Source: Octopus sinensis | Lineage: Eukaryota | NCBI RefSeq assembly: GCF_006345805.1 | Contig: NC_043003.1 | Span: forward strand, 44,454,001 to 44,518,000 | Length of the DNA: 64,000 nt | Direction: 5' to 3' | Part shown: positions 4,420 to 60,298 of the stretch, piece after piece | Layout: each line of letters opens with the position of its first letter | How positions within the stretch are numbered: the stretch's first letter is position 1 | The notes under the pieces: model-generated | Database searches by the model: none | Told to the model about the DNA's origin: nothing | What the model saw: only the letters and a program-made list of their open reading frames with translations | Translations under genes and position numbers: made by a program

Positions 4420-5900
4420 TACATTATTTAGATTTGACGGGCATTTTACCTCATCTTGTTCATTGTTAACACAACGTTTCGGCTGATATACCCTCCAACC
4501 TTCATCAGGTGTCTTGGGGAAATTTCGAAAGACCCAACTATGAAATTAGGGAGGAAGTTGTCACAGATCTTGATCAAGAACAAGGATCACTTTACACCAA
4601 TGAAGTATAGACAACTCACTCAGCACTACAGTAAACCACCACACATATACGGTCCACCTAAGATTCACACGGATGGTATTCCATTAAGAACTATAGTGAA
4701 CTGTAGAGGTTCAGCATGTCATCCACTGAGCCGCTTCCTTGTGGATATAATCAGTCCATTACCAGAAAAGTCAACATATTACGTGATGAATTCCACCCAC
4801 TTCACAGAATTGATCAAGGATACCTCTATTGAATCAAACCAGATGATAAGTCTAGATGTGATAAATCTGTTCACCCAAGCCCCAACTGGTGAAGCACTAT
4901 TGGTGACTCAAGAAAAATTAGTGACAAACACTCATCTAAAAGAACGCACTAGTAACCGATATGGAACTTGGTAGAAATGTTGACCTTTTGTGTAGCAACA
5001 ATCTTCTTCAGTATGGACACTGATATATATCGACAAGAGGAGCGTTTAGCTGTGGGTTCGCCTTTATCACCGATAATAGCCAATATATACATGGGATACT
5101 TTGTGAATTTGTCTTTAGCATCAACACCCCTAAAATCAAAACTATGCCTGCGATATGTTGATGAAAATGTATACTCTGGCCCCACAAGTGCTTTTAGATC
5201 ACGTGAACTCAATAAAGCTGTCCATAGAGTTTACAATGGAAAAGGAGAAAGACAATCAGCTAGCACTCCTGGACATATTAATAATATGCACCAAGAATGC
5301 ATTCAGGACATCCATATACCACAAGCCGACCCTCAGTGGACGATACATCAACTTCAATTCCCACCATCCATACAGTGTAAAGAGAGGGATTCCTCAGTGC
5401 CTAAAACATCGAGCAAAGAATATAAGTAGCAATCGTGATACACCCCACGAAAAAATGATCAAGCTCAATAACAATCTATTAAGCAACAACTACCACGAAA
5501 ATATACTATCCACTCTAGTTATGAAGAAAAAAGAGTGAGAAAACAATAAACTGTCCACAGTCTGTCTAGGCTATGTGAGAGGACTCTCCGAAAAGATTCA
5601 AAAGATATGCGTCCCATAAGATCAGGACAATGTTCAAGAGTAATAGAACACTTCGCAAATATCTCATTCGAGTAAAACCATCAATAGAAAATATAACCAA
5701 ATACTGCGTGTACTCCATCCCATGCAGCTGTGGTCGGTTATACAAAGGCTAAACATGCCGCCCCCTTAAAACAAGGGTAGAGGAAAATCGCAAAAATGTG
5801 ACACGGGAATATATGATAAATCGGGTATTGCTGATCATGTATAGAAAATGGGAGAAGACCTCACTCTGTGGGATGAAGTTTAAAAAAATGGCATCGTGTC
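4420..5900 (+). mobile_element. 5'-truncated Penelope-like retroelement (RT plus GIY-YIG endonuclease, Penelope/Poseidon-like) with an inverted terminal-repeat fragment at its 5' junction
   Basis: Frameshifted ORFs 4456-4974, 4968-5429 and 5155-5538 give HIYGPPKIH..GIPLRTIVNCRGS, MISLDVINLFT, AVGSPLSPIIANIYM and LRYVDE. About 5700-5790 gives CVYSIPCSCGRLYKG*TCRPLKTRVEE (GIY-YIG). Confidence 0.92.
4468..4513 (-). ncRNA. Minimal type I hammerhead ribozyme motif in a PLE terminal-repeat fragment
   Basis: Minus strand: GACAC-CUGAUGA-A-GGUUGG(AGGGUAUA)UCAGCC-GAA-ACGU-U-GUGUU. Stem I GACAC/GUGUU, 6-bp stem II, palindromic ACGU stem III, GUU cleavage triplet. Confidence 0.75.
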
Positions 5901-6180: not shown

Positions 6181-6576
6181 CTCTTTTACTTGTTTCAGTC
6201 ATTTGACTGTGGCCATGCTGGAGCACTGCCTTTAGTCGAGCAAATTGACACCAGGACTTATTCTTTGTAAGCGTGGTACTTATTCTATCGGTCTCTTTTG
6301 CTGAACCGCTAAATTACGAGGGGGTAAATACACCAGCATCGGTTGTTGGGGGACAAACACAAACTCACAAACTCACAAACATACACACTTATATATGTAT
6401 ATATACATATATACGATGTGCTTCCTTCAGTTTCCGTCTACCAAATCCTATAACAAGGCTTTGGTTGGGCCGAGGCTATAGTAGAAGACAGTTTCCCAAG
6501 GTGTCATGCAGTGGGACTGAACCCGGCACAATGTGGTTCGTAAGATAGCTACTTACCACACAGTACTGCTACGCCT
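6181..6576 (-). mobile_element. tRNA-headed SINE, family A
   Basis: Matches at least six other copies in the window. tRNA-like head on the minus strand with A box and B box (GGTTCAGTCCC), an internal CA/TA microsatellite, and a GAGTAAAAGAG-type tail. Confidence 0.9.
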
Positions 6577-6590
6577 ATAAATGTGTGACC

Positions 6591-6706
6591 CTTACAGCAC
6601 GTAGGTTTCCCAAACAGTCACCCATCTAAGTACTAACTAAGCTCGATGTTGCTTAACTTCCTTGATTGGACGAAAACCGGTCCATTCAACGGTGATATGG
6701 CCATAT
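6591..6706 (-). pseudogene. 5S rRNA-derived copy (diverged, about full length)
   Basis: Reverse complement reads GGCCATATCACCGTTGAATGGACCGGTTTTCGTCCAATCAAGGAAGTTAAGCAACATCGAGCTTAGTTAGTACTTAGATGGGTGACTGTTTGGGAAACCTACGTGCTGTAAG, colinear with the metazoan 5S consensus but with many substitutions. Confidence 0.9.
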
Positions 6707-6795
6707 ATTTTATCATTTGGTTTTTCCATTGGGATAACAATAACCTGAATTAGAACATGCTTCAGAGCAAAGCGTTAGTTCAGTACAGAGAGGTA

Positions 6796-7247
6796 ATGTT
6801 AAACTGATGTTGACAAAAGGATAAGCAAGTCTGTTATGAAGTACATTATATCTTACAGATGTTTCTACTAAAGGATGTAGGGCACAGATAGCTTCATCGG
6901 CGCCTCCAGCTCCAAGTCCATACAGCAAGTGCTTATACCTTTGTCAGTTTAATTCCTTAGGTGTGCAACTATGTATCTATTTATGCGTGCGTTTATGCAT
7001 GCATGCATATATGTGTATATATACATATGCCCATACATACATATATATGTGTTCATGTGTGTCTGCAAGTTTGTGTGCGCGCGCGTGTGTGTGTATGATA
7101 ATATACATGTGAATGTGAGTGTGTGTATGTATATATTCACATTTATAAATATATATACACATGAAGAAATATATGCATACATACAAATTTATATATATAT
7201 ACATATATATATATACATATACATACATACATATACATATATATATG

Positions 7248-7326
<79 letters not shown>

Positions 7327-7616
7327 ATGTATGTATGTATATGTATATACTTTTGTCATTTTAATTTCTGATGTGTGCATGTACGTATTCCTGTGTGTGT
7401 GTTTATGCATACATGCATGCACAAACACACACATAAATACGTACATACACACATCAGGAATTAAAATGACAAACCTATAAGCACTTGCTTTATGGGCTTA
7501 GTGCTGGAGGCTCCTATGAAACTACGCATGCCCTGCATCCTATAGTAGAAACATCTGTAAGATAATATGTAGTTCATAACAGACTTGTTTATCCTTTTGT
7601 CATCTCAGTTTAACAT
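6796..7616. mobile_element. Foldback/MITE-like element with ~180 bp inverted arms around a TA/CA microsatellite core
   Basis: 6796-~6975 (ATGTTAAACTGA...GACAAAAGGATAA.CAAGTCTGTTATGAA...) is the diverged reverse complement of ~7440-7616 (...TTCATAACAGACTTGTTTATCCTTTTGTCATCTCAGTTTAACAT). Confidence 0.8.
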
Positions 7617-8455: not shown

Positions 8456-9329
8456 TGCCTGTCCGTATATCTGTGTCGTCTATCAACAGATCTATCTACT
8501 TGACTTTCTCGATAAAAGATTTCATTTCTCATTTTCTCTCTCTCTCCTTCTCTCCCTTCTCTCCCTTCTCTCTGTCCCTTTGTATGATGTATGCATGTAC
8601 GCACTAATATATACCTATAAACACACGCATTATCTACATTTGTCTCCTTATGCCTCTATGATAACATATGCGTATGTGTGTGCCTGTCTATTGTAGCCTC
8701 TGTGTGCTGTATGTCTATATGTGCATATGATATTATACATACATATATATATAAATCATATATATATATATATATATATATACATAGACACACACACATG
8801 TATATGTATACATATGTATATATTGAGGGAGAGAGGGAAAGAGAGGAAGTGACAGATAGATACATACATACAGGCATAACTAGATATCCACATACTAGTG
8901 TTTGTGTGTGTGTGTGTGTGTGTGTATTTGTGTGTGTGTTTCTGTGCACGTGGAAGTGTTTGTGTGTGTTTCTGTGTGTGGATGTGTAGGTATGTGGGCT
9001 ATCTTTTCAAATTTGAAGACCTGGGCTGTCAATTTGTGGTGAAAGCAAATGAATAAAATCGTCATAAACGGATGCAAGTAAACATACCACCACGTTGAAA
9101 GCCGTATCAGGCTCACTGAAGTGCAATTCAACCTCAATGCATACTAAACTTATTTCATTCTTTCATGTAATATTGTTTTCTCTCTCATTCTCTATAATTT
9201 CTATTTCATGTTTCCAATGTACATGTCCTTCCATTGCTAATAGAATTTCTCTAGGTTCCTGTACACTCAGACACACAACAGAGCTCATACAACTAGTTGA
9301 GAAAACACACACACGTATGTACATATTAA

Positions 9330-9724
<395 letters not shown>

Positions 9725-9899
9725 AAGTCCGTGTCCCAGCATGGTCACATTCAAATGACTGAAACAAGTAAAGCTAAGAAAGAATATATGTATGTGTGTA
9801 TTTTGTTTTTCTATTTTCATTTTTACATCCAATTTTCAAATTTTTTTCCTCTTTTCGTTTTCTTCCTTAATTTTTTCGTTTCTTTTCTATCTTCACCCT

Positions 9900-10030
9900 T
9901 TTTTCTGTCGCATGACTTTGTAAATGAACTATCCAGTGTGTTTATTTTAATGGCCTACTAATGTATGCAGTGAGTTTCTTTGCCCTAGGAGTCGGGAAGA
10001 ATTGGAAACAAAATTGAAAGGAGATAATAA
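9900..10030 (+). mobile_element. 3' terminal fragment of an R4/Dong-like LINE
   Basis: TTCTTTGCCCTAGGAGTCGGGAAGAATTGG...GAAAGGAGATAATAAT resembles the 3' UTR of the copy ending at 12170 (TTCTCTGCCCTAGGTGTATGGAAAACACTCGG...AAAGATAATAAT) and is followed by (AAT)n. Confidence 0.55.
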
Positions 10031-10166: not shown

Positions 10167-12169
10167 TGGATTAAACGCACTCAAGATGACTACAAAAATC
10201 GACAAGAACAGGTATGAGAAGACATCTCGATCGTTGACTAAAGGAGATCACTAAGAAAGGCTCATAAGTGGAAATCCCCTGGTATTGATAGAGTACCAAA
10301 TTTCTGGCTCTCATCACTCTCGTCCGCACGCAAAATGTTAGTAATACTATTTAATAGTATTATGAAAGACCCGAAAAAAACACCACATTGGATGGCAAAT
10401 GGTATTATTTACCTCCTCCCCAAAAATAACAAAACGAAAGACCCAAACAACTATCGGCTTATAACATGTTTATCTACTACCTATAAGATCTTGACATCTA
10501 TTCTAGTAGAGAAAACATATACGTTTATGGAAGAGAATAACCTCTTTCCCACTGAACAAAAAGGATGCAGACGAGGCTCATACGGATGCAAAGATCAGCT
10601 CCTAATTAATCGCATGATCCTTGAGAACTGCTATAACAAGCGCAAAAATCTCAGCTCTTCAAGGATTGATTATAAAAAAGCCTTTGAGAGCATACCACAT
10701 TCGTGGATTCTGAAATCGCTGGACATTTTCAAAATTTCTCCTGTGATTTCAGATTTTTTAAAGTATAATATGTCCCTATGGACACGAAGCTCCAATTATA
10801 TCATTCTAATGGAGTATTGCACTCAAACAACATTAGCATAAACTGTGGAATTTTCCAAGGTAACTCACTTTCACCACTAATATTCTGCATAGCACTAATA
10901 CCACTCTCAAGTGAACTGAATAGAACAGGATATGGCTACAAAATTGACAACAAGAAAATAAGCCATCTATTTTATATGGATGACTTAAAGCTATATGGCA
11001 AAGATGATGAAGAGCTTGAAGGATTATTACATACAGTGAAAGGATTCAGTGATGATATCGGGATGGAGTTTGGCCTTGAAAAGTGTGCCAAAGCCGCTTT
11101 TAAGAAAGGGAAATTGGTAAAGTCTAGTTCAATCGAATTAGATGTCGAAATAGTAATAAAGGAACTTGAGCAGGAACAAACCTATAAACACCTAGGAATA
11201 AATGAAGGCTCTGGTATCCAGCATGCAAGCATGGAAGAGAAGGTTAGGAAAGAATGTTATAGAATAGTCCGAGCAGTCCTGAAGTCTGATCTGAATGCAT
11301 ATAATAAGGTTTTAGCCTTAAATTCCCTAGCAGTACCAGTTGTTCTCAATAGCTTCAATATGCTTAACTGGAATACTAGTGAAATAATGAAAATTGACAG
11401 GAAAAACTACCAAGCAATGTGATGAAAAATGGAGCTGACCCAAAATGCCGATTCTGTAACGATGAGATTGAAACAATAGACCACCTAATCTCAGGATGTA
11501 GAGTCTTAGCACCTGCAAGACATGATAGAGTCGGCCAGTATTTACACTGGACAATATGTCGGCATTATAAAATCAAAACCACTGACAAATGGTATAAACA
11601 TCATCCAGAAGCTGTGACTGAGGGAGAAAATGTATCGATTCTATGGGACTTCTCCGTGAAGACCGACAGGACTATAAAAGCCAATAAACCGGATATCATT
11701 GTAAAAGATCAGACAAAAAGGATGTGTTTATTAATTGACATGAGTATTCTCTGTGATCACAATATAGCGGCGAAAGAATTTGACAAGATTAGTAAATATA
11801 AAGACCTGCTAATGGAAATTGAAAAAATGTGGCATCTCAAGGCGACTATAGTACCAGTGATTGTAGGATCTCTAGGAATGATAAAAAACGGTACTGAAAC
11901 TTATTTGAAAATGATTCCAGGCTTACCATCCCTACAGGAAGTGCAAAAAATCGTATTAACTGGAACAGCTCATGTACTGAGAAGAGCACTATCGCTGTGA
12001 AAATAACATCCATCCATGAATTTATTTATTTATTAATTTTTAAATACATATTTTATCTGTGAATTTGCGCGTGTAATCTGGGAATGCATACAATGCCCTT
12101 CTCTGCCCTAGGTGTATGGAAAACACTCGGCGAGAAACGGAAGAAAATTTGAAGAAAGAAGGAAAAAAG

Positions 12170-20041: not shown

Positions 20042-21340
20042 TACGAGGGGCGTTCAATAAGTAATGCCCCTGACCCACTTCCCATAGCAGTAGAGCAACC
20101 AAACTTGGCACATTTATTAGGCTTTTTCTACATAGGAACTACCCAGAGTTATGCATTTCTTCCATCGTTTGAAGCAGCTCTGGAGACCGTTTTTGTAGAA
20201 GACCCCAGCTTGGTCCTCCAACCACGACGTGACTTCAGAAATCAAGGCTGCATCATCTGGGGAACGCGATCCTTTCAAAAACAACTATCATGGCTGGGAA
20301 GAGGGGAAAATCAGAGGGTGCAAGGTCAGGAGAGTAGGGGGTGTTGGGGGATGAGTTCATAGCCGCACGCCTGTGCTTCTGATCTGGCGACACGCGAGTT
20401 GTGGACCGGAGCGCTGTCCTGCAGGAGGAGGATGCCTTTGCTGATCTTGCCCTGCCTCTTGATTTTGATAGCTTCTCTTAATTTCCTCAAAAGTGAAGCA
20501 TAATAGGCTCCTGTAATTGTGGTACCCTTTGCCAGGAAATATGTCATCACTACTCCGTCCTGCTCCCAGAAGACTGTGAGCATGAACTTGCCAGCGGAGG
20601 GCTGCACCCTTGCCTTCTTTGGAGGAGGTGAATCACGGAGCTTCCATTGCATTGACTGGGCTTTGGTCTCTGGATCATAGTGATGGACCCAGGTTTCATC
20701 CTGTGTAAACTGTCTTTTGAAAAATTTTGACTCATCTTCTTGGCACATCTCCAAATTCATCCTCGAGCACTCGACGCGTTCTTGCTTCGGGAAAAGTGTG
20801 AGCAACCTGAGAATCCATCTGGCAGACACCTTTTGCATATGCAAATGGTCATGAATTATAGTTTCCACAGACCTGGTACTAATCGTGATCGCACGGGCTA
20901 TTTGGCGAATAGTTATGCGTCGATCTTCCAAAATGGCAGCCTCAACTTGACGGACAGATGCCTCATCAATGGCAGAAGGGAGGCGACCAGATTTATGAGC
21001 TGTTTCCACAGAGTTCCGACCATGTTTGAATTCACGATGCCAGCGTTTTACAAGGTCATATGATGGGACATCATCACCATAAGTTACTTTCATTTCATCA
21101 AACGTCTCCTGTGGTGTGCGTCCTTTCAAATACAAAAACCGGATCACTGCTTGATACTCAACAGGCTCCATTTCACACTTGACTCAGTTCAAACACCTGT
21201 AAATCGGAAACCAGAATTAGTTCATAGCTGTAATTTGCCACGTAATCTATAGAGATATGAATAATTGAACATGCAAATTTTCAGCTAGATCAAACAACAG
21301 CAAGTGGGTCAGAGGCATTACTTATTGAACGCCCCTCGTA
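20042..21340 (-). mobile_element. Near-full-length mariner transposon, 1299 bp including both TA dinucleotides
   Basis: TIRs TACGAGGGGCGTTCAATAAGTAATGCC(C/T)CTGACCCACTT at both ends, with TA at both ends. Confidence 0.97.
20117..21171 (-). pseudogene. Mariner DD34D transposase, frameshifted near HPPYSPDL
   Basis: 281-aa ORF with TQDETWVHHYDPETK and LLQDSAPVH. A +1 shift at ~20345 puts YSPDLAPSDF and the C-terminus in another frame. Confidence 0.93.
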
Positions 21341-21451: not shown

Positions 21452-21658
21452 CTTTTACTCTATTACATATTTCAGTCATTTGACGGCGGCCATACTGGAG
21501 CACCGCATTTAGTCAAGCAAATCGACCCTAGTACTTATTCTTTGTAAGCCTAAAGCTTATTCTAACGGCCTCTGTTGCCGAACCGCTAAGTTACGGGGAC
21601 GTAAACACACCAGCATCGGGTGTCAAGTGATGTTGGAGGATGGGGTGGCAAACACAAT

Positions 21659-21718
<60 letters not shown>

Positions 21719-21849
21719 GCTTCCGTCTACCAAATCCACTCACAAGGCTATATTAGAAGACACTTGCCCAAGGTGCCACGCAGTGCGTCTGAACTCAGAA
21801 CCATGTGGTTGATAAGCAAGCTACTTACCATACAGCCAATCCTGCGCCT
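21452..21849 (-). mobile_element. tRNA-headed SINE, family A
   Basis: Colinear with the other family A copies; internal (CA)n(TA)n. Confidence 0.9.
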
Positions 21850-21863
21850 TCAAATAAGTAACG

Positions 21864-21968
21864 TTTACAGCACCTAGGATCCCAAGCGGCCACCCTTCTA
21901 AGTACTAACATTGCTCACCTTCGGTGATCGGACGAGAACCGATGTTTTCAAAGTGATATGGCCGTAAA
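21864..21968 (-). pseudogene. 5S rRNA-derived copy with an internal deletion
   Basis: Reverse complement reads TACGGCCATATCACTTTGAAAACATCGGTTCTCGTCCGATCACCGAAGGTGAGCAATGTTAGTACTTAGAAGGGTGGCCGCTTGGGATCCTAGGTGCTGTAAA, matching the 5S consensus but missing a short segment between the A box and AGTACTT. Confidence 0.9.
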
Positions 21969-22244
21969 GATCTGTATGAAATAGTTGCTGAATGCAAGTA
22001 TACCTTCATGTGAAGTTAACGTTTTTTTTAATTTATGATAAATATTGCGTTGTTACTTACCGTTTTAGCCGATTATGTATAGACATGGAAATCGTCCCAC
22101 TTGAATTTCCAGGAGTGTACTTGCGTAACACTTTCTTACGATCCCTCATTAAGTATTTTGAATGCATTTTTCATTACGTGTACATTAATTTGTTACATGA
22201 ATACATATATGTATGTATATATATATATATGTGTGTATATATAT

Positions 22245-22366
<122 letters not shown>

Positions 22367-22382
22367 GTATATATATAAATTC

Positions 22383-28878: not shown

Positions 28879-29097
28879 CTCTTTTACTCTTTTACTTGTT
28901 TCAGTCATCTGACTGCGGCCATGCTGGAGCACCGCCTTTAGTCGAGCAAATCGACCCCGGGACTTATTCTTTTGTAAGCCCAGTACTTATTCTATCGGCC
29001 TCTTTTGCCGAACCGCTAAGTAACGGGGACGTAAACACACCAGCATAGGTTGTCAAGCAATGCTAGGGTGACAAACACAGACACACAAACACACACA

Positions 29098-29143
<46 letters not shown>

Positions 29144-29322
29144 ATATATATACATATATACGACGGACTTCTTTCAATTTCGTCTACCAATCCACTCACA
29201 AGGCATTGGTCGGCCCGGGGCTATAGCAGAAGACACTTGCCCAAGATGCCACACAGTGGGACTGAACCCGGAAACATGTGGTTGGTTAGCAAGCTACTTA
29301 CCACACAGCCACTCCTGCACCT
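28879..29322 (-). mobile_element. tRNA-headed SINE, family A
   Basis: Well-preserved copy with an internal (CA)n(TA)n tract. Confidence 0.93.
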
Positions 29323-32153: not shown

Positions 32154-32347
32154 CTCTTTTACTCATTTATTTGTTTCGGTCATTTGACTGCGGCCATGCT
32201 GGAGCACCGCCTTTAGTCGAGCAAATCGACCCCTGGACTTATTCTTTGTAAGCCCAGTACTTATTCTATCGGTCTCTTTTGCCGAACTGCTAAGTGATGG
32301 GGACGTACACACACCAGCATCGTTGTCAAGCAAAGCTAGGGGGACGA

Positions 32348-32379
<32 letters not shown>

Positions 32380-32386
32380 GATATAT

Positions 32387-32418
<32 letters not shown>

Positions 32419-32591
32419 CATATATACGACAGATTTCTTTCAGTTTTCCGTCTACCAAATCCACTCACAAAGCATTGGTTGGCCCGGGGCTATAGTAGAA
32501 GACACTTGTCCAAGATGCCACGCAGTGGGACTGAACCCGGAATCATGTGGTTGGTTAGCAAGCTACTTACCACACAGCCACTCCTGCGCCT
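32154..32591 (-). mobile_element. tRNA-headed SINE, family A
   Basis: Well-preserved copy. Confidence 0.93.
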
Positions 32592-40141: not shown

Positions 40142-40304
40142 AAGGCTCAGGAGAGGGTGTGTGTTAAGTAGTTTGATTACCGACCACATGGTTCCGGGTA
40201 CAGTCCCACTGCGTAGTACCTTGGGTAGTTGTCTTCTGCTATAGCCTCGGGCCGACCAAAACCTTCTGAGTGGATTTGGTTAACGGAAATTGAAAGAGGC
40301 TTGT

Positions 40305-40353
<49 letters not shown>

Positions 40354-40583
40354 TCTTTACTCTTTTACTCTTTTACTTGTTTCAATCATTTGACTGCGGC
40401 CATGCTGGAGCACCGCCTTTAGTCGAACAAATCGACCCCGGGTCTTATTCTTTGTAAGCCCAGTACTTATTCTATCGGTCTCTTTTGCCGAACCGCAAGT
40501 GACGGGGACGTAAACACACCAGCATCTGTTGTCAAGCAATGCTAGGGGGACAAACACAAACACACACACACACATATATAATA

Positions 40584-40618
<35 letters not shown>

Positions 40619-40778
40619 CGACAAGCTTCTACTAAATCCACTCACAAGGCATTGGTCGGCCCGGGGCTATAGCAGAAGACACTTGCCCAAGATGCCACGC
40701 AGTGGGACTGAACCCGGAACCATGTGGTTGGTTAGCAAGCTACTTACCACACAGCCACACACACACACACACACACAC

Positions 40779-40839
<61 letters not shown>

Positions 40840-41045
40840 TATATATATAATATATATATATATGTATATGTATGTGAGCGTCCGTGTGCGTGTGTGTATG
40901 TTGTGACTCTCTGTTTGCTCCCACCAACATTGTTTAATAAACGAGCCCGGTTTGTTTACGTCCCCGTAACTTAGCGGTTCGGTAAAAGATGGCGGTGCTC
41001 CGACATGGCCGCAGTGAAGTATCCGAAACAAAAGAATAGAAGTAT
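40142..41045 (+). mobile_element. Older SINE family A copy split by an opposite-orientation copy of the same family
   Basis: Head half 40142-40307 and tail half ~40890-41045 lie on the plus strand, flanking microsatellite and the inner copy. Confidence 0.75.
40353..40757 (-). mobile_element. tRNA-headed SINE, family A (inner, better-preserved copy)
   Basis: Near-identical to 28879-29322 and 32154-32591. Confidence 0.93.
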
Positions 41046-41689: not shown

Positions 41690-42090
41690 TGTATTCTTTT
41701 ATTCTTTTACTTGCTTCAGCCATTCGATTGCGGCCATGCTGGAACACATCGTTGATGTGTGTCAAACAAATAGGCCCCAGGACTTTATGTGTTTTAAGGC
41801 CTAATACTTATCGTGTCGGTTTCTTTACTAATGCGTTAAGTTACAGGGATCTAAACGCACCAACACCGGTTGCCAAGCGGTGATAGGTAGAAGAACACAG
41901 ATAAAACACACATGCACACACACAGATGACGAGCTTCTTTCGGTTTTTGTCTACCCATTCCATTCATAAGGCATTAGTCCGCCTGCGGCTATAGTAGAAG
42001 TCACTTGCCCAAAGTGCCACGTTGTGGTATCGAACCCGGAATCATTTGGTTGGGAAGCAAGCTTCTTAACACGCTGCCACGCCAGCGCCA
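41690..42090 (-). mobile_element. Diverged SINE family A copy
   Basis: Colinear head, body and tail with many substitutions. Confidence 0.85.
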
Positions 42091-46491: not shown

Positions 46492-49400
46492 AGTCAAAAC
46501 AATCGATGAAGAGATCCTCCTCGTAATAAATAACAAGGCCGAAAGCCTACACATAGAGAAGATCTCCAAGTTATGGAAAGATGACTGCAACAAAGAGGAA
46601 CTAAAATCCCTACAACGCTGGGAAAAAAGTGCCGCCTGGTTCCTAAACTATGAATCGACTTTCAAAACGGATTACTCTTCCAATAACCCGTTCATAAAAA
46701 TGGGAAAACCAGGAACCCAACCACACAACTACTCCGCCAACCCTCCAACCTTGAACAAAAGAAGGAAACAGCATATTGAAGATGTACCTTCTTACCCCAC
46801 GTCCATAAGGAGGAACAAGAACCCTGGAAACTCTCACCACCAGAATTACATTAACGAATTTCCCTCTTCAAGGAGACGCTATACACAACAACTCAACAAC
46901 TACTCGAATACCTTATTAACAAATAAAAGAGGATCCCACTACCAGGATAGACACAACAACATCCACACCACGAGGGGACAACAAGGTAATTTTCACTTTC
47001 TCAACTCTCACAATACACAACAAACCCATACCACTCGATACAAGCACCCACGCAGGCCACTCATATCACCACAATCCATCACAACACAAAGAAACACACA
47101 CCAACACCCGCAATACAGGAACACCCCATTCTATCCACAACCACGAACCCGAACCATATTTCACAACAAGGAATATAAACAACACACAGGACCTCCTAAC
47201 ACCAACAGACAACCCCTCTACCCCAACCATTTTTTAGACACAGCACACAGATACAGGCAAACAAAATAACACAGGACAGGGAAGAGAAACATAAACTAAT
47301 TAAAGTCATCAATTTAACCAATACAGAACCCAACCCCAACCTTCTCAACTTACTCTCCAAAGGTCTGAAATTCACACCCCCCCCACGTCCAAACTACTAC
47401 GAAATGAAGGAAGACATTACAGAATTTTGTAGAAAATTGCGACTTAGTGAGGAACCATTCGACCAGCACAATGAGGATGAGTCACTAGCTAGAAATAAAA
47501 GCAACTACACCCCACGAAAAGGTAGAAATAAAATCCTAGACGAATTCTGTGAGCACATTACAAACTTCCCCTACCAACACTTACACAAACCAAAACCAAA
47601 CCAAACCTCAACAAGAAAGAGTGGGAAGAATTAAACAAATTAAAAAATGAAAGATCTATCACCATTAAAGAGGCCGATAAAGGAAGTGCAGTAGTCTTAA
47701 TGGAGACAGAATACTATATCAACTTAGCACTCTCACCTTGGAAAATGGAACATATTACGAAAAGGCTGAACACTACAATCAACAGAAAATTATGAGAAAC
47801 TTAAAAACCCTGATCAACCCCCACAAAGAAGAACTCACTAACAAAGAATTCAACTTCATCACAAATTTCACTAGAAAACCAGCCTCTTCTACGGTATTCC
47901 CAAAATTCATAAAAGCGAATTAATAAGTAAGGCATGCAAGGAAGCCACAAACTCTGTAATCAATGTCCCCTCACCAAATGACCTCAAATTGAGACCTATA
48001 ATAGCAGGTCCCGCTTGCGAAACCCACCGCCTTAGCAACTTCATTGATACCCTCTCAAGCCGTTCCTCAAACACATTAAAAGCTACATAAGGGACGATCT
48101 AGATATGCTCAACCACCTCCCCAATACACTTCTTGCTGAACAAACCCTGCTAGTAACATTCGATGTAGTCAATCTTTACTCCAACATCCCCCACAACCTA
48201 GGAATAGAAGCTATCCAATTCTGGCTGGATAATTACTCCAACGAACTCCCACACCGCATCAAAAAGGAATTTATTTTAGAAGGACTCAAATTCATCTTAG
48301 AGAATAATTTCTTCACCTTCAACAACAAATTCTACAGACAAAAATCAGGGACGGCAATGGGAACGAAAACAGCTCCCACTTACGCCAACGTAGTCATGGG
48401 ATACCTGGAAATCACCCTCTATAATAACGTTCTTAACCAATTTGGCACCACTCTCCACACACACATAGAGAAGAACTGGAAGAGATATCTTGATGACTGC
48501 TTCATCCTTTGGCCCGAAACCGTCGAGAAGCTTAACGAATTTCACACTCTTATAAATGGGCTCAACACAAACATTATTTTCACAATGGAATACAGCCCTC
48601 AACAAATTCCCTTCCTCGACATCCTCATTAAAATTCACAACAAAAATAGAAACAGACATATACTACAAGCCCACAGACTCCAAGCAATACCTCCCTTTCA
48701 ATTCATGCCACCCCCTAGACACGTTAAAATTAACATTCCCTACAACTTAGCCAAGAGAATTTGCACTATAGTCTCCAATAAAACAACCCGTCTCTTACGT
48801 CTACAAGAACTCAAGGGCATTAACAAGCAGGGATTACCCCACGTCACTAATTGACAATGGGATCCAACGCCCCTAAAACTCAGCACGCAGGAACTTAGAC
48901 GCCCTAAACCTGTTACAATCGAAACCCCATACTCTACCATACATCTCTACACACAACCCCCTCAACAATGAAGCTTTTGACACCATCCTCAGAACATTCC
49001 TGTACTACAAAAGGACCATAGAATGAACAAATCCTCCTAACACACGAAATCATAAAGAGCAAAAGGCAACCCAAATCATTGAAAACCATCCTAACAAATG
49101 CCAAAGTACTGCCAACCACAACAACTAAACCCACAGTAAACAAATGCATAGACCCAACTGTGGTATATGCATCAACCTAATAGAAGGTCCGGAATTCCTT
49201 TTTAAACAAGGACAACGTTTCACAGTAAAACAACTTCACATGCGCATCAGAAAACCTAGTATATGTCTTAACTTGCTCGGGATGTAATGAACACTACATA
49301 GGCCAAACAAAAAATAGCCTCCGCCAACGCATGACTGTCCACAGATCCCAAATAATAAAGGAATATAGAAAAATAGCATTTAGTGCACATATTGATACCT

Positions 49401-50215: not shown

Positions 50216-50372
50216 CACATATAAGAGACAGACTCTAATCTCTCTTTTATATTTTGATAAGCATAACAAATGCGCAACCGCTAAAAAGAACTTTCACCTA
50301 ATTAAATTACTTAAATTACTTCAATTATTTGTCAGCATTTTCTTCATTTCCTTTTTTATATATATATAATAT

Positions 50373-50417
<45 letters not shown>

Positions 50418-51099
50418 GTGTGTGCGTGTGCATTCATGTGTATATGTATATATATATAAATATATATATATATCTATACCACACACACGTATGTATATAT
50501 ATATATATATATATATACGTGTGCATATATGTATATATATATATATATACATATATGTGTGCATGTGTGTTTGTACGTGTTGTATGAATATGTAGCCATG
50601 CACACATACACATATACATATACATAGCTATAATTACTTCCAAATTTTGAATGTCCTCCGAGAGGCTCTATGCAGATTCTTCCTTAAATTTTCTTATTAA
50701 ACTTTTTTATATTTAGCACTTAATTATTTCATTTCCTGAGTGGTCTGTTGGTGGTCATGTTACGAAAGGCAACGATTTAATATGTTACGTCCAACACATT
50801 AATTCAGTCTCTAATCTGTTCAACTTTTACTCCGAATACTCGACGAAAAGAAATGTAATTTTCAGTTTCAAGAATTTGAATGCATGTTTCTGTTAAAATA
50901 CCCAGTATTAATTTAATACGAACCGAGAAACCAGCTAGCAATGTATTTAAGGAATATTTACCTGAAATTAGATTTTAATCTTATTATACTTATTATACTT
51001 AATTTTATTATAACTGGAATTCGAAAATATATTTTTTTTAAACTATAGAAGCCGAGTCGTGACTGTATGGTAAGAGAGATAGACATGGTTTTCGGCTGT

Positions 51100-59012: not shown

Positions 59013-60298
59013 TACGAGGGGCGTTCAATAAGTAATGCCTCTGACCCACTTGCGTTTGTTTGATCTAGCTTAAAATGTTGCATGTGCAATTATTTATATC
59101 TTTATAGATTAAGTGGCAAATTACAGCTCTGAACTAATTGTGGTGTGTGATTTACAGGTGTTTGAACTGAGTCAAGTGTGAAATGGAGCCTGTTGAGTGT
59201 CGAGCAGTGATGCAGTTTTTGTATTTGAAAGGACGCACACCACGGGAGACTTTTGATGAAATAAAAGTAATTTATGGTGATGATGCCCCATCATATGACC
59301 TTGTAAAACGCTGGCATCGTGAATTCAAACATGGTCGGAACTTTGTGGAAACAGCTCCCAGATCTGGTCGCCCCCTTCTGCCATTGATGAGGCATCTGTC
59401 CGTCAAGCTGAGGCTGCCATTTTGGAAGATCGACGCATAACTATTCGCGAAATAGCCCATGAGGTCAAGATTAGTACCGGGTCTGTGGAAACTATCATTC
59501 ATGACCATTTGCATAAGCAAAAGGTTTCTGCCAGATGGATTTCCAGGCTGCTCACACCTTTCAAGAAGCAAGAACGCGTCGATAGCGTGAGGATGAACTT
59601 GAAGATGTGCCAAGAAGATGAGTCAAAATGTTTCAAAAGACTGATTACACAGGATGAAACCTGGGTCTATCACTATGATCCAGAGACCAAAGTCCAGTCA
59701 ATGCAGTGGAAGCACCGTGACTCACCTCATCCAAAGAAGGCAAGGGTGCAGCCCTCCGCTGGCAGGGTCATGCTCACAGTCTTCTGGGACCAGGACGGAG
59801 TAGTGATGACAGATTTCTTGGCAAAGGGTGCCACAATTACAGGAGTCTATTATGCTTCACTTTTGAGGAAATTAAGAGAAGCTATCAAAATCAAGAGGCG
59901 GGGCAAGATCAGCAAAGGCATCCTCCTCCTGCAGGACAACGCTCCGATCCACAACTCGCGTGTCGCCAGATCAGAAGCACAGGCGTGCGGCTATGAACTC
60001 ATCCCCCATCTCCTGACCTGCACCCTTTGATTTTCACCTCTTCCCAGCCATGAAGTTGTTTTTGAAAGGAAAGCGTTTCCCAGATGATGCAGCCTTGATT
60101 TCTGAATTCACGTCGTGGTTGGAGGACCAAGCTGGGGTCTTCTACAAAAACGGTCTTCAGAGCTGCTTCAAACGATGGGAGAAATGCGTAACTCTGGGTG
60201 GTTCCTATGTAGAAAAAGACTAATAACTGTGCCAAGTTTCGTTGCTCTACTGCTATGGGAAGTTGGTCAGGGGCATTACTTATTGAACGCCCCTCGTA
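59013..60298 (+). mobile_element. Near-full-length mariner transposon, same family as 20042-21340
   Basis: Same TIRs with TA at both ends; 1286 bp. Confidence 0.97.
59183..60223 (+). pseudogene. Mariner DD34D transposase with at least two frameshifts
   Basis: ORFs 59183-59440 and 59422-60030 (TQDETWVYHYDPETK, LLQDNAPIH); deletion at HPPYSPDL; stop at 60221-60223. Confidence 0.93.

What the first reader, a model, noticed from the sequence alone, without database searches (positions are those of the whole stretch)
6181..6706. Possible 5S rRNA-tRNA composite SINE (copy 1 of 2)
Seen: on the minus strand a near-full 5S copy (6591-6706) is followed 14 bp later by the tRNA head of a family A SINE. 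The same layout recurs at 21452-21968 with a 14 bp linker identical at 8 of 14 positions (ATAAATGTGTGACC vs TCAAATAAGTAACG). Both SINE parts carry CAAGGTG, unlike the 5S-less copies at 28879, 32154 and 40353 (CAAGATG). Established: composite 5S/tRNA SINEs exist in some vertebrates and insects. Inference: an octopus SINE subfamily with two Pol III promoters in tandem that moves as one unit. I do not recall this being described in cephalopods.
Basis: partly seen in the sequence, partly recalled or inferred. Interest (0 to 1): 0.7.

Follow-up and report, generated by a model that had tools for sequence, protein, structure and literature searches.

The report
Octopus 5S-plus-SINE composite retroelement copies
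Two old, decayed copies of a mobile element in an octopus genome carry a whole 5S ribosomal-RNA-like sequence joined by the same 13-base linker to a whole tRNA-like SINE, which most likely means the pair was copied as one unit; this kind of fusion is known in vertebrates and insects but has barely been recorded in molluscs.

Summary
Rfam finds only two 5S matches in the window, at 6589-6708(-) and 21862-21969(-). Each sits 13 nt upstream of a full-length copy of an abundant Octopus SINE, in the same orientation.

Similarity between the two loci starts at 5S nt 4 and stops just past the SINE tail. The flanks are unrelated. The 5S, head and body are equally diverged (79-83% identity), and the linker matches at 8/13 with identical length. 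Neither unit's ancestral sequence contains a Pol III terminator (T4 or longer). This fits one fused 5S-linker-SINE source copied by retrotransposition as a unit.

Limits:
- The two SINE parts share no exclusive derived sites.
- This family shows no target-site duplications even in young copies, so that test does not apply.
- In 114 kb of Octopus DNA (window plus two O. bimaculoides loci), only these 2 of 13 SINE 5' ends carry 5S.
- Genome-wide copy number could not be measured here. A 2026 O. vulgaris repeat annotation lists a SINE "5S" class (4 families, 9.8 Mb) without describing it.

Verdict: a new member of a known kind, of moderate interest.

The parts
6181..6708 (-). Composite copy 1 (c1): 5S-like + linker + full SINE. 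An A/G-rich tail runs on to about 6160.
6589..6708 (-). 5S rRNA-like module of copy 1, matching the full model 1-120.
   Evidence: Rfam RF00001, 63.9 bits against gathering score 38. It has one private TTTT, from GGTTCTCG to GGTTTTCG.
6576..6588 (-). 13-nt linker of copy 1 (TCACACATTTATA). It has no T4 terminator.
6420..6575 (-). SINE head of copy 1: a tRNA-like 5' part with box A and box B, then the central region.
   Evidence: Alignment with 14 other heads. Box A and box B motifs, and an ARAGORN cloverleaf found only at relaxed thresholds.
6347..6419 (-). Internal (TA)n(TG)n-type microsatellite of the SINE in copy 1.
   Evidence: Present in every full copy.
6181..6346 (-). SINE 3' body and GTAAAAGAG-type tail of copy 1.
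21452..21969 (-). Composite copy 2 (c2): 5S-like + linker + full SINE.
21862..21969 (-). 5S rRNA-like module of copy 2. It has a deletion of about 10 nt covering the end of box A and the intermediate element.
   Evidence: Rfam RF00001, 51.1 bits. Alignment.
21849..21861 (-). 13-nt linker of copy 2 (TTACTTATTTGAA).
   Evidence: 8/13 identical to copy 1, same length.
21721..21848 (-). SINE head of copy 2, with a 17-18 nt internal deletion.
21452..21627 (-). SINE 3' body and tail of copy 2. The microsatellite lies at 21628-21720.
28887..29322 (-). 5S-less SINE copy c3 (younger subfamily, CATCTTGG). Comparison copy.
32162..32591 (-). 5S-less SINE copy c4 (younger subfamily).
40368..40758 (-). SINE copy c5 (younger subfamily). 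Its 5' end is lost in a microsatellite, and it is nested inside c7.
41703..42089 (-). Divergent, older 5S-less SINE copy c6, with a perfect box B (GGTTCGATACC).
40143..40312 (+). 5S-less SINE head c7 carrying the same C state as c1 and c2. Its body continues at about 40853-41032 after the nested c5.

Best explanation
The two loci are retrotransposed copies of one fused Pol III element. The element consists of a complete 5S rRNA-like module, a fixed 13-nt linker without a terminator, and a complete tRNA-like Octopus SINE (head with A and B boxes, internal microsatellite, 3' body and GTAAAAGAG-type tail).

Proposed origin and mechanism:
1. One fusion event put a 5S copy 13 nt upstream of a SINE. 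This was either a SINE insertion into the AT-rich 3' flank of a 5S copy that had lost its T-run, or a reverse-transcriptase template switch.
2. Transcription from the 5S internal control region reads through the linker and the whole SINE.
3. The partner LINE recognises the SINE 3' tail and reverse-transcribes the whole RNA. New copies therefore start at 5S nt +1 and end at the SINE tail.
4. The same master can also fire its A/B-box promoter and give ordinary 5S-less copies.

Both copies here are old (about 0.10 JC distance from a near-consensus copy) and are decayed, non-functional relics.

Shown: the anatomy, the homology borders, equal divergence of the modules, the absence of terminators, and the Octopus origin of the SINE.

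Inferred: transcription from the 5S promoter, mobilisation by a LINE, and the existence of an amplifying family.
For: - Two full-model 5S matches, both directly upstream of full SINE copies and co-oriented with them.
- A blastn of the two units with 3 kb of flank on each side gives one collinear match, from 5S nt 4 to 15-20 nt past the tail. The other hits are microsatellite.
- Identity between c1 and c2: 5S 78.7%, linker 8/13 with equal length, head 81.9%, body 83.1%.
- JC distance is 0.20 between the copies and 0.10 from each to the near-consensus copy b1, so their SINE parts are of similar age.
- There is no T4 run anywhere in c2 or in the young SINE b1. c1 has only one, a private C>T change. 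A true 5S gene would terminate right after nt 120.
- The SINE family is abundant in O. bimaculoides.
- A published O. vulgaris annotation lists SINE class '5S' with 4 families and 9,831,953 bp, one of them recently active (PMC13282606). De novo repeat finders only produce such consensus sequences from multi-copy 5S-headed repeats.
- Precedents exist: 5S fused to the 5' end of a tRNA-derived SINE head in Deu-SINEs (described in PMC4758252 and PMC4824008), and HaSE3 in moths (PMC3272025).
Against: - Only two copies were seen, 15 kb apart.
- There were none among 7 SINE heads in another 50 kb of O. bimaculoides.
- The SINE parts of c1 and c2 share no exclusive derived site, while c1 shares three with the 5S-less b1. 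A private composite lineage is therefore not demonstrated.
- No target-site duplication brackets the unit. Young 5S-less copies show none either.
- I could not compare the 5S parts with the canonical Octopus 5S gene. Most differences they share against human 5S are ordinary protostome states.
- It is not established that the 'SINE 5S' families of the O. vulgaris paper have this structure.
- Activity of the 5S control region is untested, and c2's is deleted.
Confidence: 0.62

Rival explanations
1. Recurrent dead-end chimeras. Each copy arose independently when the LINE reverse transcriptase, on reaching the 5' end of a SINE RNA, switched template to the 3' end of one abundant 5S-related transcript carrying a 13-nt trailer. 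The chimeras themselves never acted as masters.
For: The SINE parts of c1 and c2 share no exclusive derived sites and sit in different sub-lineages: c1 groups with b1, while c2 has ancestral states. Template switching onto small Pol III RNAs is the accepted origin of chimeric retrogenes and was proposed for 5S-tRNA SINE heads (PMC4758252 and PMC4824008).
Against: It needs the same unusual donor RNA (5S plus a 13-nt non-terminated trailer) and the same junction twice. Two of 13 SINE copies is far too frequent for sporadic switching. A 9.8-Mb 'SINE 5S' class with 4 families in O. vulgaris points to amplification. A composite master that also fires its A/B-box promoter explains the shared sites with 5S-less copies equally well.
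Confidence: 0.17
2. Independent SINE insertions at a preferred site 13 nt downstream of members of a dispersed 5S pseudogene or 5S-derived repeat family (targeted insertion).
For: This SINE does favour AT/TA-rich targets. c3 and c5 lie in (TA)n, and c5 is nested in c7's internal (TA)n. The linker ends in an AT-rich stretch (ATTTATA in c1, ATTTGAA in c2).
Against: No solitary 5S or 5S+linker copy exists in 114 kb. Nothing homologous continues after the SINE tail, so the 5S unit would have to end exactly at the insertion point. The upstream flanks are unrelated, so these are not 5S rDNA array units. Nucleotide-exact reuse of a site is not seen for the other copies.
Confidence: 0.09
3. A local DNA-level duplication, such as unequal recombination or gene conversion between two nearby loci, copied one 5S+SINE unit to a second place 15 kb away.
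For: Both copies lie on the same strand within 15 kb. No further copy was found in the other 50 kb examined.
Against: The duplicated segment would have to end exactly at 5S nt +1-4 and at the SINE tail, with no flank carried along. The 0.20 JC distance equals that between unrelated old SINE copies.
Confidence: 0.05
4. Genuine 5S rRNA genes that happen to lie next to SINEs.
For: Both pass the Rfam gathering score over the full model.
Against: There is no T-run terminator after nt 120. c2 has a 10-nt deletion in the control region. Helix I is mispaired in c1 (alignment). They are single dispersed copies rather than a tandem array. The divergence between them (21%) is incompatible with a concertedly evolving gene family.
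Confidence: 0.02

Closest known systems
5S-tRNA chimeric-head Deu-SINEs of vertebrates (AmnSINE1, LmeSINE1, OS-SINE1 type; Nishihara et al. 2006, as described in PMC4758252 and PMC4824008)
   Same: A 5S rRNA sequence is fused to the 5' end of a tRNA-derived SINE head. The element keeps the SINE body and tail. The origin proposed for that group is a single fusion or template switch followed by amplification.
   Different: In those families the tRNA part is partial and the 5S promoter has taken over. Here the whole tRNA-like head, with both A and B boxes, is retained behind a complete 5S and a 13-nt linker, which looks like the earlier dimeric stage. The host is a mollusc. Whether the octopus SINE carries a Deu domain was not tested.
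HaSE3 of Helicoverpa and related lepidopteran SINE3 families (PMC3272025; PMC10886601)
   Same: A 5S-derived head joined to the body and tail of a co-resident tRNA-derived SINE (HaSE1). It is interpreted as a 5S/tRNA-SINE chimera in an invertebrate.
   Different: In HaSE3 the 5S head replaces the tRNA head. In the octopus element both heads are present in tandem.
Dimeric (complex) SINEs such as MEG-TR of fruit bats (listed in PMC10946416) and Alu or B1-dID type dimers (SINEBase definitions, PMC3531059)
   Same: Two complete Pol III-derived modules are combined into one retrotransposing unit, which SINEBase counts as a new family.
   Different: My recollection, not checked here, is that MEG-TR has the modules in tRNA-5S order. 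The host is mammalian and the tails are L1-type poly(A). Here the order is 5S then tRNA-like SINE, with a non-poly(A) tail.
Chimeric retrogenes made by LINE template switching (U6-L1, 5S-L1; Buzdin et al., cited in PMC4758252)
   Same: A full-length small Pol III RNA copy is joined to the 5' side of a retroelement copy.
   Different: Those chimeras are one-off products, with variable junctions directly at the small-RNA 3' end and truncated partners. Here the junction, linker and full-length partner recur.
'SINE 5S' class in the 2026 Octopus vulgaris repeat annotation (PMC13282606: 4 families, 9.83 Mb)
   Same: Same genus, and a SINE class defined by 5S similarity. This is probably the same elements.
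   Different: It is only a class label in a table.

Membership tests
SINE (SINEBase definition, PMC3531059) | Short (<1 kb), interspersed, non-tandem repeat | tested here: met
   The units are 528 and 518 bp. The two copies have unrelated flanks.
SINE (SINEBase definition, PMC3531059) | [quoted passage not shown] | not testable with these tools
   Only 2 composite copies were seen in 114 kb. No Octopus genome can be scanned here. The indirect evidence is the 9.83 Mb 'SINE 5S' class in O. vulgaris.
SINE (SINEBase definition, PMC3531059) | Head at least 60% identical to tRNA, 5S or 7SL RNA over at least 60 nt | tested here: met
   Full-length Rfam 5S matches at 63.9 and 51.1 bits, against a gathering score of 38.
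SINE (SINEBase definition, PMC3531059) | Distinguished from an RNA pseudogene by extra body sequence or by substitutions shared among copies | tested here: met
   An extra body is present (linker plus complete SINE). The linker is shared between copies. Shared substitutions against the canonical Octopus 5S could not be judged.
5S-derived SINE (SINE3) / 5S-tRNA composite SINE | 5S-derived module at the extreme 5' end of the repeated unit | tested here: met
   Homology between the copies begins at 5S nt 4.
5S-derived SINE (SINE3) / 5S-tRNA composite SINE | Conserved 5S internal control region (box A, intermediate element, box C) able to drive Pol III | tested here: inconclusive
   c1 keeps all three regions with substitutions. 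c2 has lost about 10 nt at box A and the intermediate element. No functional test was possible.
5S-derived SINE (SINE3) / 5S-tRNA composite SINE | tRNA-derived segment after the 5S part | tested here: inconclusive
   Box A TGGCTGTGTGG has 1 mismatch. Box B has 2 mismatches, and is perfect in c6. A cloverleaf appears at the same place in 4 heads, but only at relaxed ARAGORN thresholds. The Rfam tRNA model gives no match, and ARAGORN at default settings finds none.
5S-derived SINE (SINE3) / 5S-tRNA composite SINE | No Pol III terminator between the modules, so that one transcript spans the unit | tested here: met
   No T4 run in c2 or in the SINE b1. c1 has only one, a private TTTT.
5S-derived SINE (SINE3) / 5S-tRNA composite SINE | 3' tail shared with a partner LINE | not tested
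   LINE fragments occur in the window (10335-12000), but no LINE 3' end was compared with the GTAAAAGAG tail.
DeuSINE superfamily | Deu central domain | not testable with these tools
   No SINE-domain library (SINEBase, Dfam or Repbase) is on hand. The literature says tRNA-Deu is a main octopus SINE class (PMC8967140).
Template-switch chimeric retrogene | Individually variable junction directly at the small-RNA 3' end, with a partner truncated at variable points | tested here: not met
   Both copies have the same 13-nt linker and the same SINE start.
Functional 5S rRNA gene | T-run terminator after nt 120, tandem array, near-identity among copies | tested here: not met

The most novel reading that the evidence does not exclude
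Octopus genomes hold an amplifying heterodimeric SINE family in which a complete type-1 (5S) and a complete type-2 (A/B box) Pol III promoter module are carried in tandem. It would be the first characterised 5S-derived SINE in Lophotrochozoa. It would also be an observable intermediate of the process thought to have produced the 5S-tRNA chimeric heads of AmnSINE1-type elements. One master would emit both 5S-headed and ordinary copies.
Probability: 0.45. Interest if true: 0.5.

Novelty: new member of a known kind. Interest (0 to 1): 0.4.

Why it matters
5S-derived SINEs are rare (about 2% of catalogued families) and are reviewed as known only from fish, reptiles, mammals and insects. A full 5S joined to a full tRNA-like SINE in octopus would extend them to molluscs. 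It would show the dimeric stage that models of 5S-tRNA head formation assume but rarely observe.

There is also a practical point. Such copies inflate 5S rRNA gene counts in cephalopod annotations. They also explain the otherwise undescribed 'SINE 5S' class in octopus repeat tables.

It does not change any general principle of SINE biology.

Tried and rejected
1. Target-site duplications. None are convincing around the whole unit, around the SINE part alone, or around 5S-less copies including the young b1. I rejected this test as uninformative for this family.

2. Shared derived substitutions in the 5S parts. Adding a Drosophila 5S, also from memory, showed that most are ordinary protostome states. 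Without the canonical Octopus 5S I dropped this argument. The 1983 octopus 5S paper is not held.

3. Fishing other copies through spurious ORF 'proteins'.
- A six-frame query of 5S+linker found nothing.
- A consensus 5S+linker+head query found two O. bimaculoides proteins. These gave 50 kb of Octopus DNA with many SINEs but no 5S.
- The mariner transposase route gave ENA contigs L001 and L002, which lack the SINE and are not octopus.
- Look-ups of window ORFs and of P0124-P0126 found nothing on record.

4. Two metagenome pattern scans, one for the junction and one for the SINE head, gave no match.

5. Hidden 5S remnants upstream of 5S-less heads. Smith-Waterman scores were no better than shuffled controls.

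6. Monophyly of the composites. They share 0 exclusive sites. This neither proves nor excludes a common master.

7. The Rfam tRNA model on a young head gave no match.

8. The low-threshold Rfam miRNA matches (mir-297, mir-466 and others) are microsatellite artefacts.

Full report
OBSERVATION

On the minus strand, Rfam's 5S_rRNA model matches over its whole length at 6589-6708 (63.9 bits) and 21862-21969 (51.1 bits). The gathering score is 38. These are the only family matches at gathering level in the 64 kb. In the E<=10 scan, no other 5S match is among the 150 best of 235 matches that were listed. The other high-scoring matches there are miRNA models hitting microsatellites. ARAGORN finds no tRNA gene.

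Reading the sequence and aligning the two regions shows the same order in both:
- a 5S-like module;
- a full SINE with head AGGCGCAGGAGTGGCTGTGTGGTAAGTAGC..., an internal (TA)n(TG)n microsatellite, a 3' body, and a GTAAAAGAG-type tail.

WHAT THE SINE IS

The window holds further copies of the same SINE without 5S:
- c3 at 28887-29322(-);
- c4 at 32162-32591(-);
- c5 at 40368-40758(-);
- c6 at 41703-42089(-), which is divergent;
- c7 at 40143-40312(+), whose body resumes at about 40853 after the nested c5;
- several fragments.

I made a six-frame translation of a consensus of 5S+linker+head and used it as a protein query. It hit two annotated Octopus bimaculoides proteins, LOC106868758 and LOC106867260. 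Their loci are L003 and L004, 50 kb of GCA_001194135.2. Both are dense with the same SINE at 75-97% identity. The window is therefore Octopus DNA, and 'family A' is a major Octopus SINE.

Support for a tRNA-like head is moderate:
- box A TGGCTGTGTGG has 1 mismatch to TRGCNNAGTGG;
- box B GGTTCAGTCCC has 2 mismatches, and c6 has a perfect GGTTCGATACC;
- ARAGORN at relaxed thresholds draws the same cloverleaf at the 5' end of four heads;
- however, the Rfam tRNA model does not match a young head, and ARAGORN at default settings finds nothing.

IS THE COMPOSITE ONE UNIT?

(a) Borders. I ran blastn on the two units with 3 kb of flank on each side. It gives a single collinear match running from 5S nt 4 to 15-20 nt past the tail. 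All other hits are microsatellite or non-collinear. This excludes a segmental duplication that carried flanking DNA. The borders are those expected of an RNA that starts at 5S +1 and ends at the SINE tail.

(b) Equal decay. Identity between c1 and c2 is 78.7% in the 5S, 81.9% in the head and 83.1% in the body. The SINE parts are 0.20 JC apart, and each is 0.10 from the near-consensus copy b1. The modules look equally old. On the scale used for O. vulgaris (JC 0.09 is about 25 My and 0.2 about 56 My; PMC13282606), each copy is very roughly 25-30 My old. That age is an inference.

(c) Linker. By my binomial estimate, 8 of 13 matches has a chance of about 0.01 at this base composition, before counting the identical length. 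The junction is therefore homologous.

(d) Terminators. No run of four or more T occurs anywhere in c2, nor in the young SINE b1 plus its flank. c1 has one, created by a private C>T change inside the 5S. A real 5S gene terminates in a T-run right after nt 120. Here only TTT is present in the linker, so a Pol III transcript started in the 5S could run through the SINE.

(e) Frequency. Thirteen SINE 5' ends can be assessed in 114 kb, and only c1 and c2 carry 5S+linker. This holds by Smith-Waterman against shuffled controls, by an nhmmer profile, and by Rfam on L003 and L004.

WHAT DOES NOT HOLD

It is also present in the 5S-less c7 and in the 5S-less O. bimaculoides copies b1, b2, b3 and b5. The old c6 has C at that site too. 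It marks an older or general subfamily. CATCTTGG is the derived state of the young c3-c5 group.
- The SINE parts of c1 and c2 share no exclusive derived site. c1 shares three with the 5S-less b1 (GGGAAAG, ACTACGC, GGCAGTG), where c2 keeps the ancestral states. A private composite lineage is therefore not demonstrated. A master that also fires its own A/B-box promoter would produce plain copies with the same states, so this does not refute a composite master either.
- Target-site duplications are absent around the unit. The young b1 shows none either, so the test does not apply to this family.
- My first impression was that the two 5S parts share many derived changes. That came from using human 5S as the yardstick. 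The canonical Octopus 5S was not obtainable.

MECHANISM

Best explanation, about 0.6 confidence:
1. A single fusion placed a 5S copy without a terminator 13 nt upstream of a SINE.
2. Transcripts from the 5S control region read through the linker and the SINE.
3. The partner LINE used the SINE tail, so whole-unit copies were inserted.
4. The two copies here are old relics. c2 has lost about 10 nt of box A and the intermediate element, and helix I is mispaired in c1.

The fusion itself could have been a SINE insertion into the AT-rich flank. This SINE likes TA-rich targets: c3 and c5 lie in (TA)n, and c5 sits inside c7's own microsatellite. Alternatively it could have been a template switch, as proposed for vertebrate 5S-tRNA heads (PMC4824008).

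Rivals:
- Recurrent dead-end chimeras made with one unusual 5S transcript (0.17).
- Site-specific SINE insertion behind a dispersed 5S pseudogene family (0.09). No solitary 5S+linker was seen, and there is no homology after the tail.
- Local DNA duplication (0.05). The borders argue against it.
- Real 5S genes (0.02).

LITERATURE

- Fusion of 5S to the 5' end of a tRNA-derived SINE head is known in Deu-SINEs of vertebrates (PMC4758252 and PMC4824008).
- A 5S head on the body of a tRNA SINE is known in moths as HaSE3 (PMC3272025).
- SINEBase treats a combination of two complete SINE modules as a new (complex) family and gives the criteria used in my membership table (PMC3531059).
- A 2024 review states that 5S-derived SINEs are known from reptiles, insects, fish and mammals. 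No mollusc is listed (PMC10946416).
- The 2026 curated repeat annotation of O. vulgaris tabulates a SINE class '5S' with 4 families and 9,831,953 bp. One family has 7 recent insertions. No description is given (PMC13282606). That is about 3% of SINE base pairs, and it fits an amplifying family better than sporadic chimeras. Whether those consensus sequences have the structure seen here could not be checked.

VERDICT

This is a new member of a known kind, a 5S-tRNA-type composite SINE in a new phylum. It is notable for keeping both complete heads. Interest is about 0.4.

Noticed in passing
window 40143-41032: Nested SINEs in opposite orientation. Copy c5 (40368-40758, minus) sits inside the internal (TA)n microsatellite of copy c7, whose head is at 40143-40312(+) and whose body resumes at about 40853-41032(+). 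Together with c3 lying in (TA)n, this suggests that the SINE prefers TA-repeat targets, including its own microsatellite.
   Followed up: partly
window 20326-21171 (-) and 59422-60030 (+): Two decayed mariner-type transposase ORFs (HTH_48 plus Transposase_1). Their closest database relatives (84-90% amino-acid identity) are not octopus. They include a protein of the mantis shrimp Oratosquilla oratoria (P0011) and ENA contigs L001 and L002, which lack the Octopus SINE. No O. bimaculoides protein was among the 120 hits listed. This may be horizontally spread mariner.
   Followed up: partly
L003 10001-14854 and L004 10001-15284 (O. bimaculoides LOC106868758, LOC106867260): Two annotated 'uncharacterized proteins' match a six-frame translation of the SINE head at 64-72% identity over about 9-10% of the 605-aa query (roughly 55-60 residues). 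Either SINE pieces are exonised in them, or the gene models include repeat sequence.
   Followed up: no
window 4456-5538, 10335-12000, 48105-48854: Broken reverse-transcriptase ORFs. By the look of their motifs the first and last appear Penelope-like and the middle one LINE-like, but none was run against a domain library. The one at 10335-12000 is split over three frames. None was compared with the SINE tail, so the partner LINE is unknown.
   Followed up: no
window-wide, e.g. 6971-7480, 9326-9961, 22190-22380, 50370-50630: Long (TA)n, (TG)n and (TATG)n tracts give dozens of low-threshold Rfam 'miRNA' matches (mir-297, mir-466, mir-5014, mir-3149) and long spurious ORFs (IYIYIY..., THTHTH...). 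These are artefacts of low complexity.
   Followed up: yes
L004 10740-10950: The O. bimaculoides assembly has a run of N that starts inside the internal microsatellite of SINE copy b2. SINE-internal microsatellites may be a recurrent cause of assembly gaps.
   Followed up: no
protein P0121 (Eumeta japonica EVAR_54388_1): A moth 'hypothetical protein' was the best hit to the translated 5S part of the query (165 bits). It looks like a gene model called across 5S rDNA.
   Followed up: no
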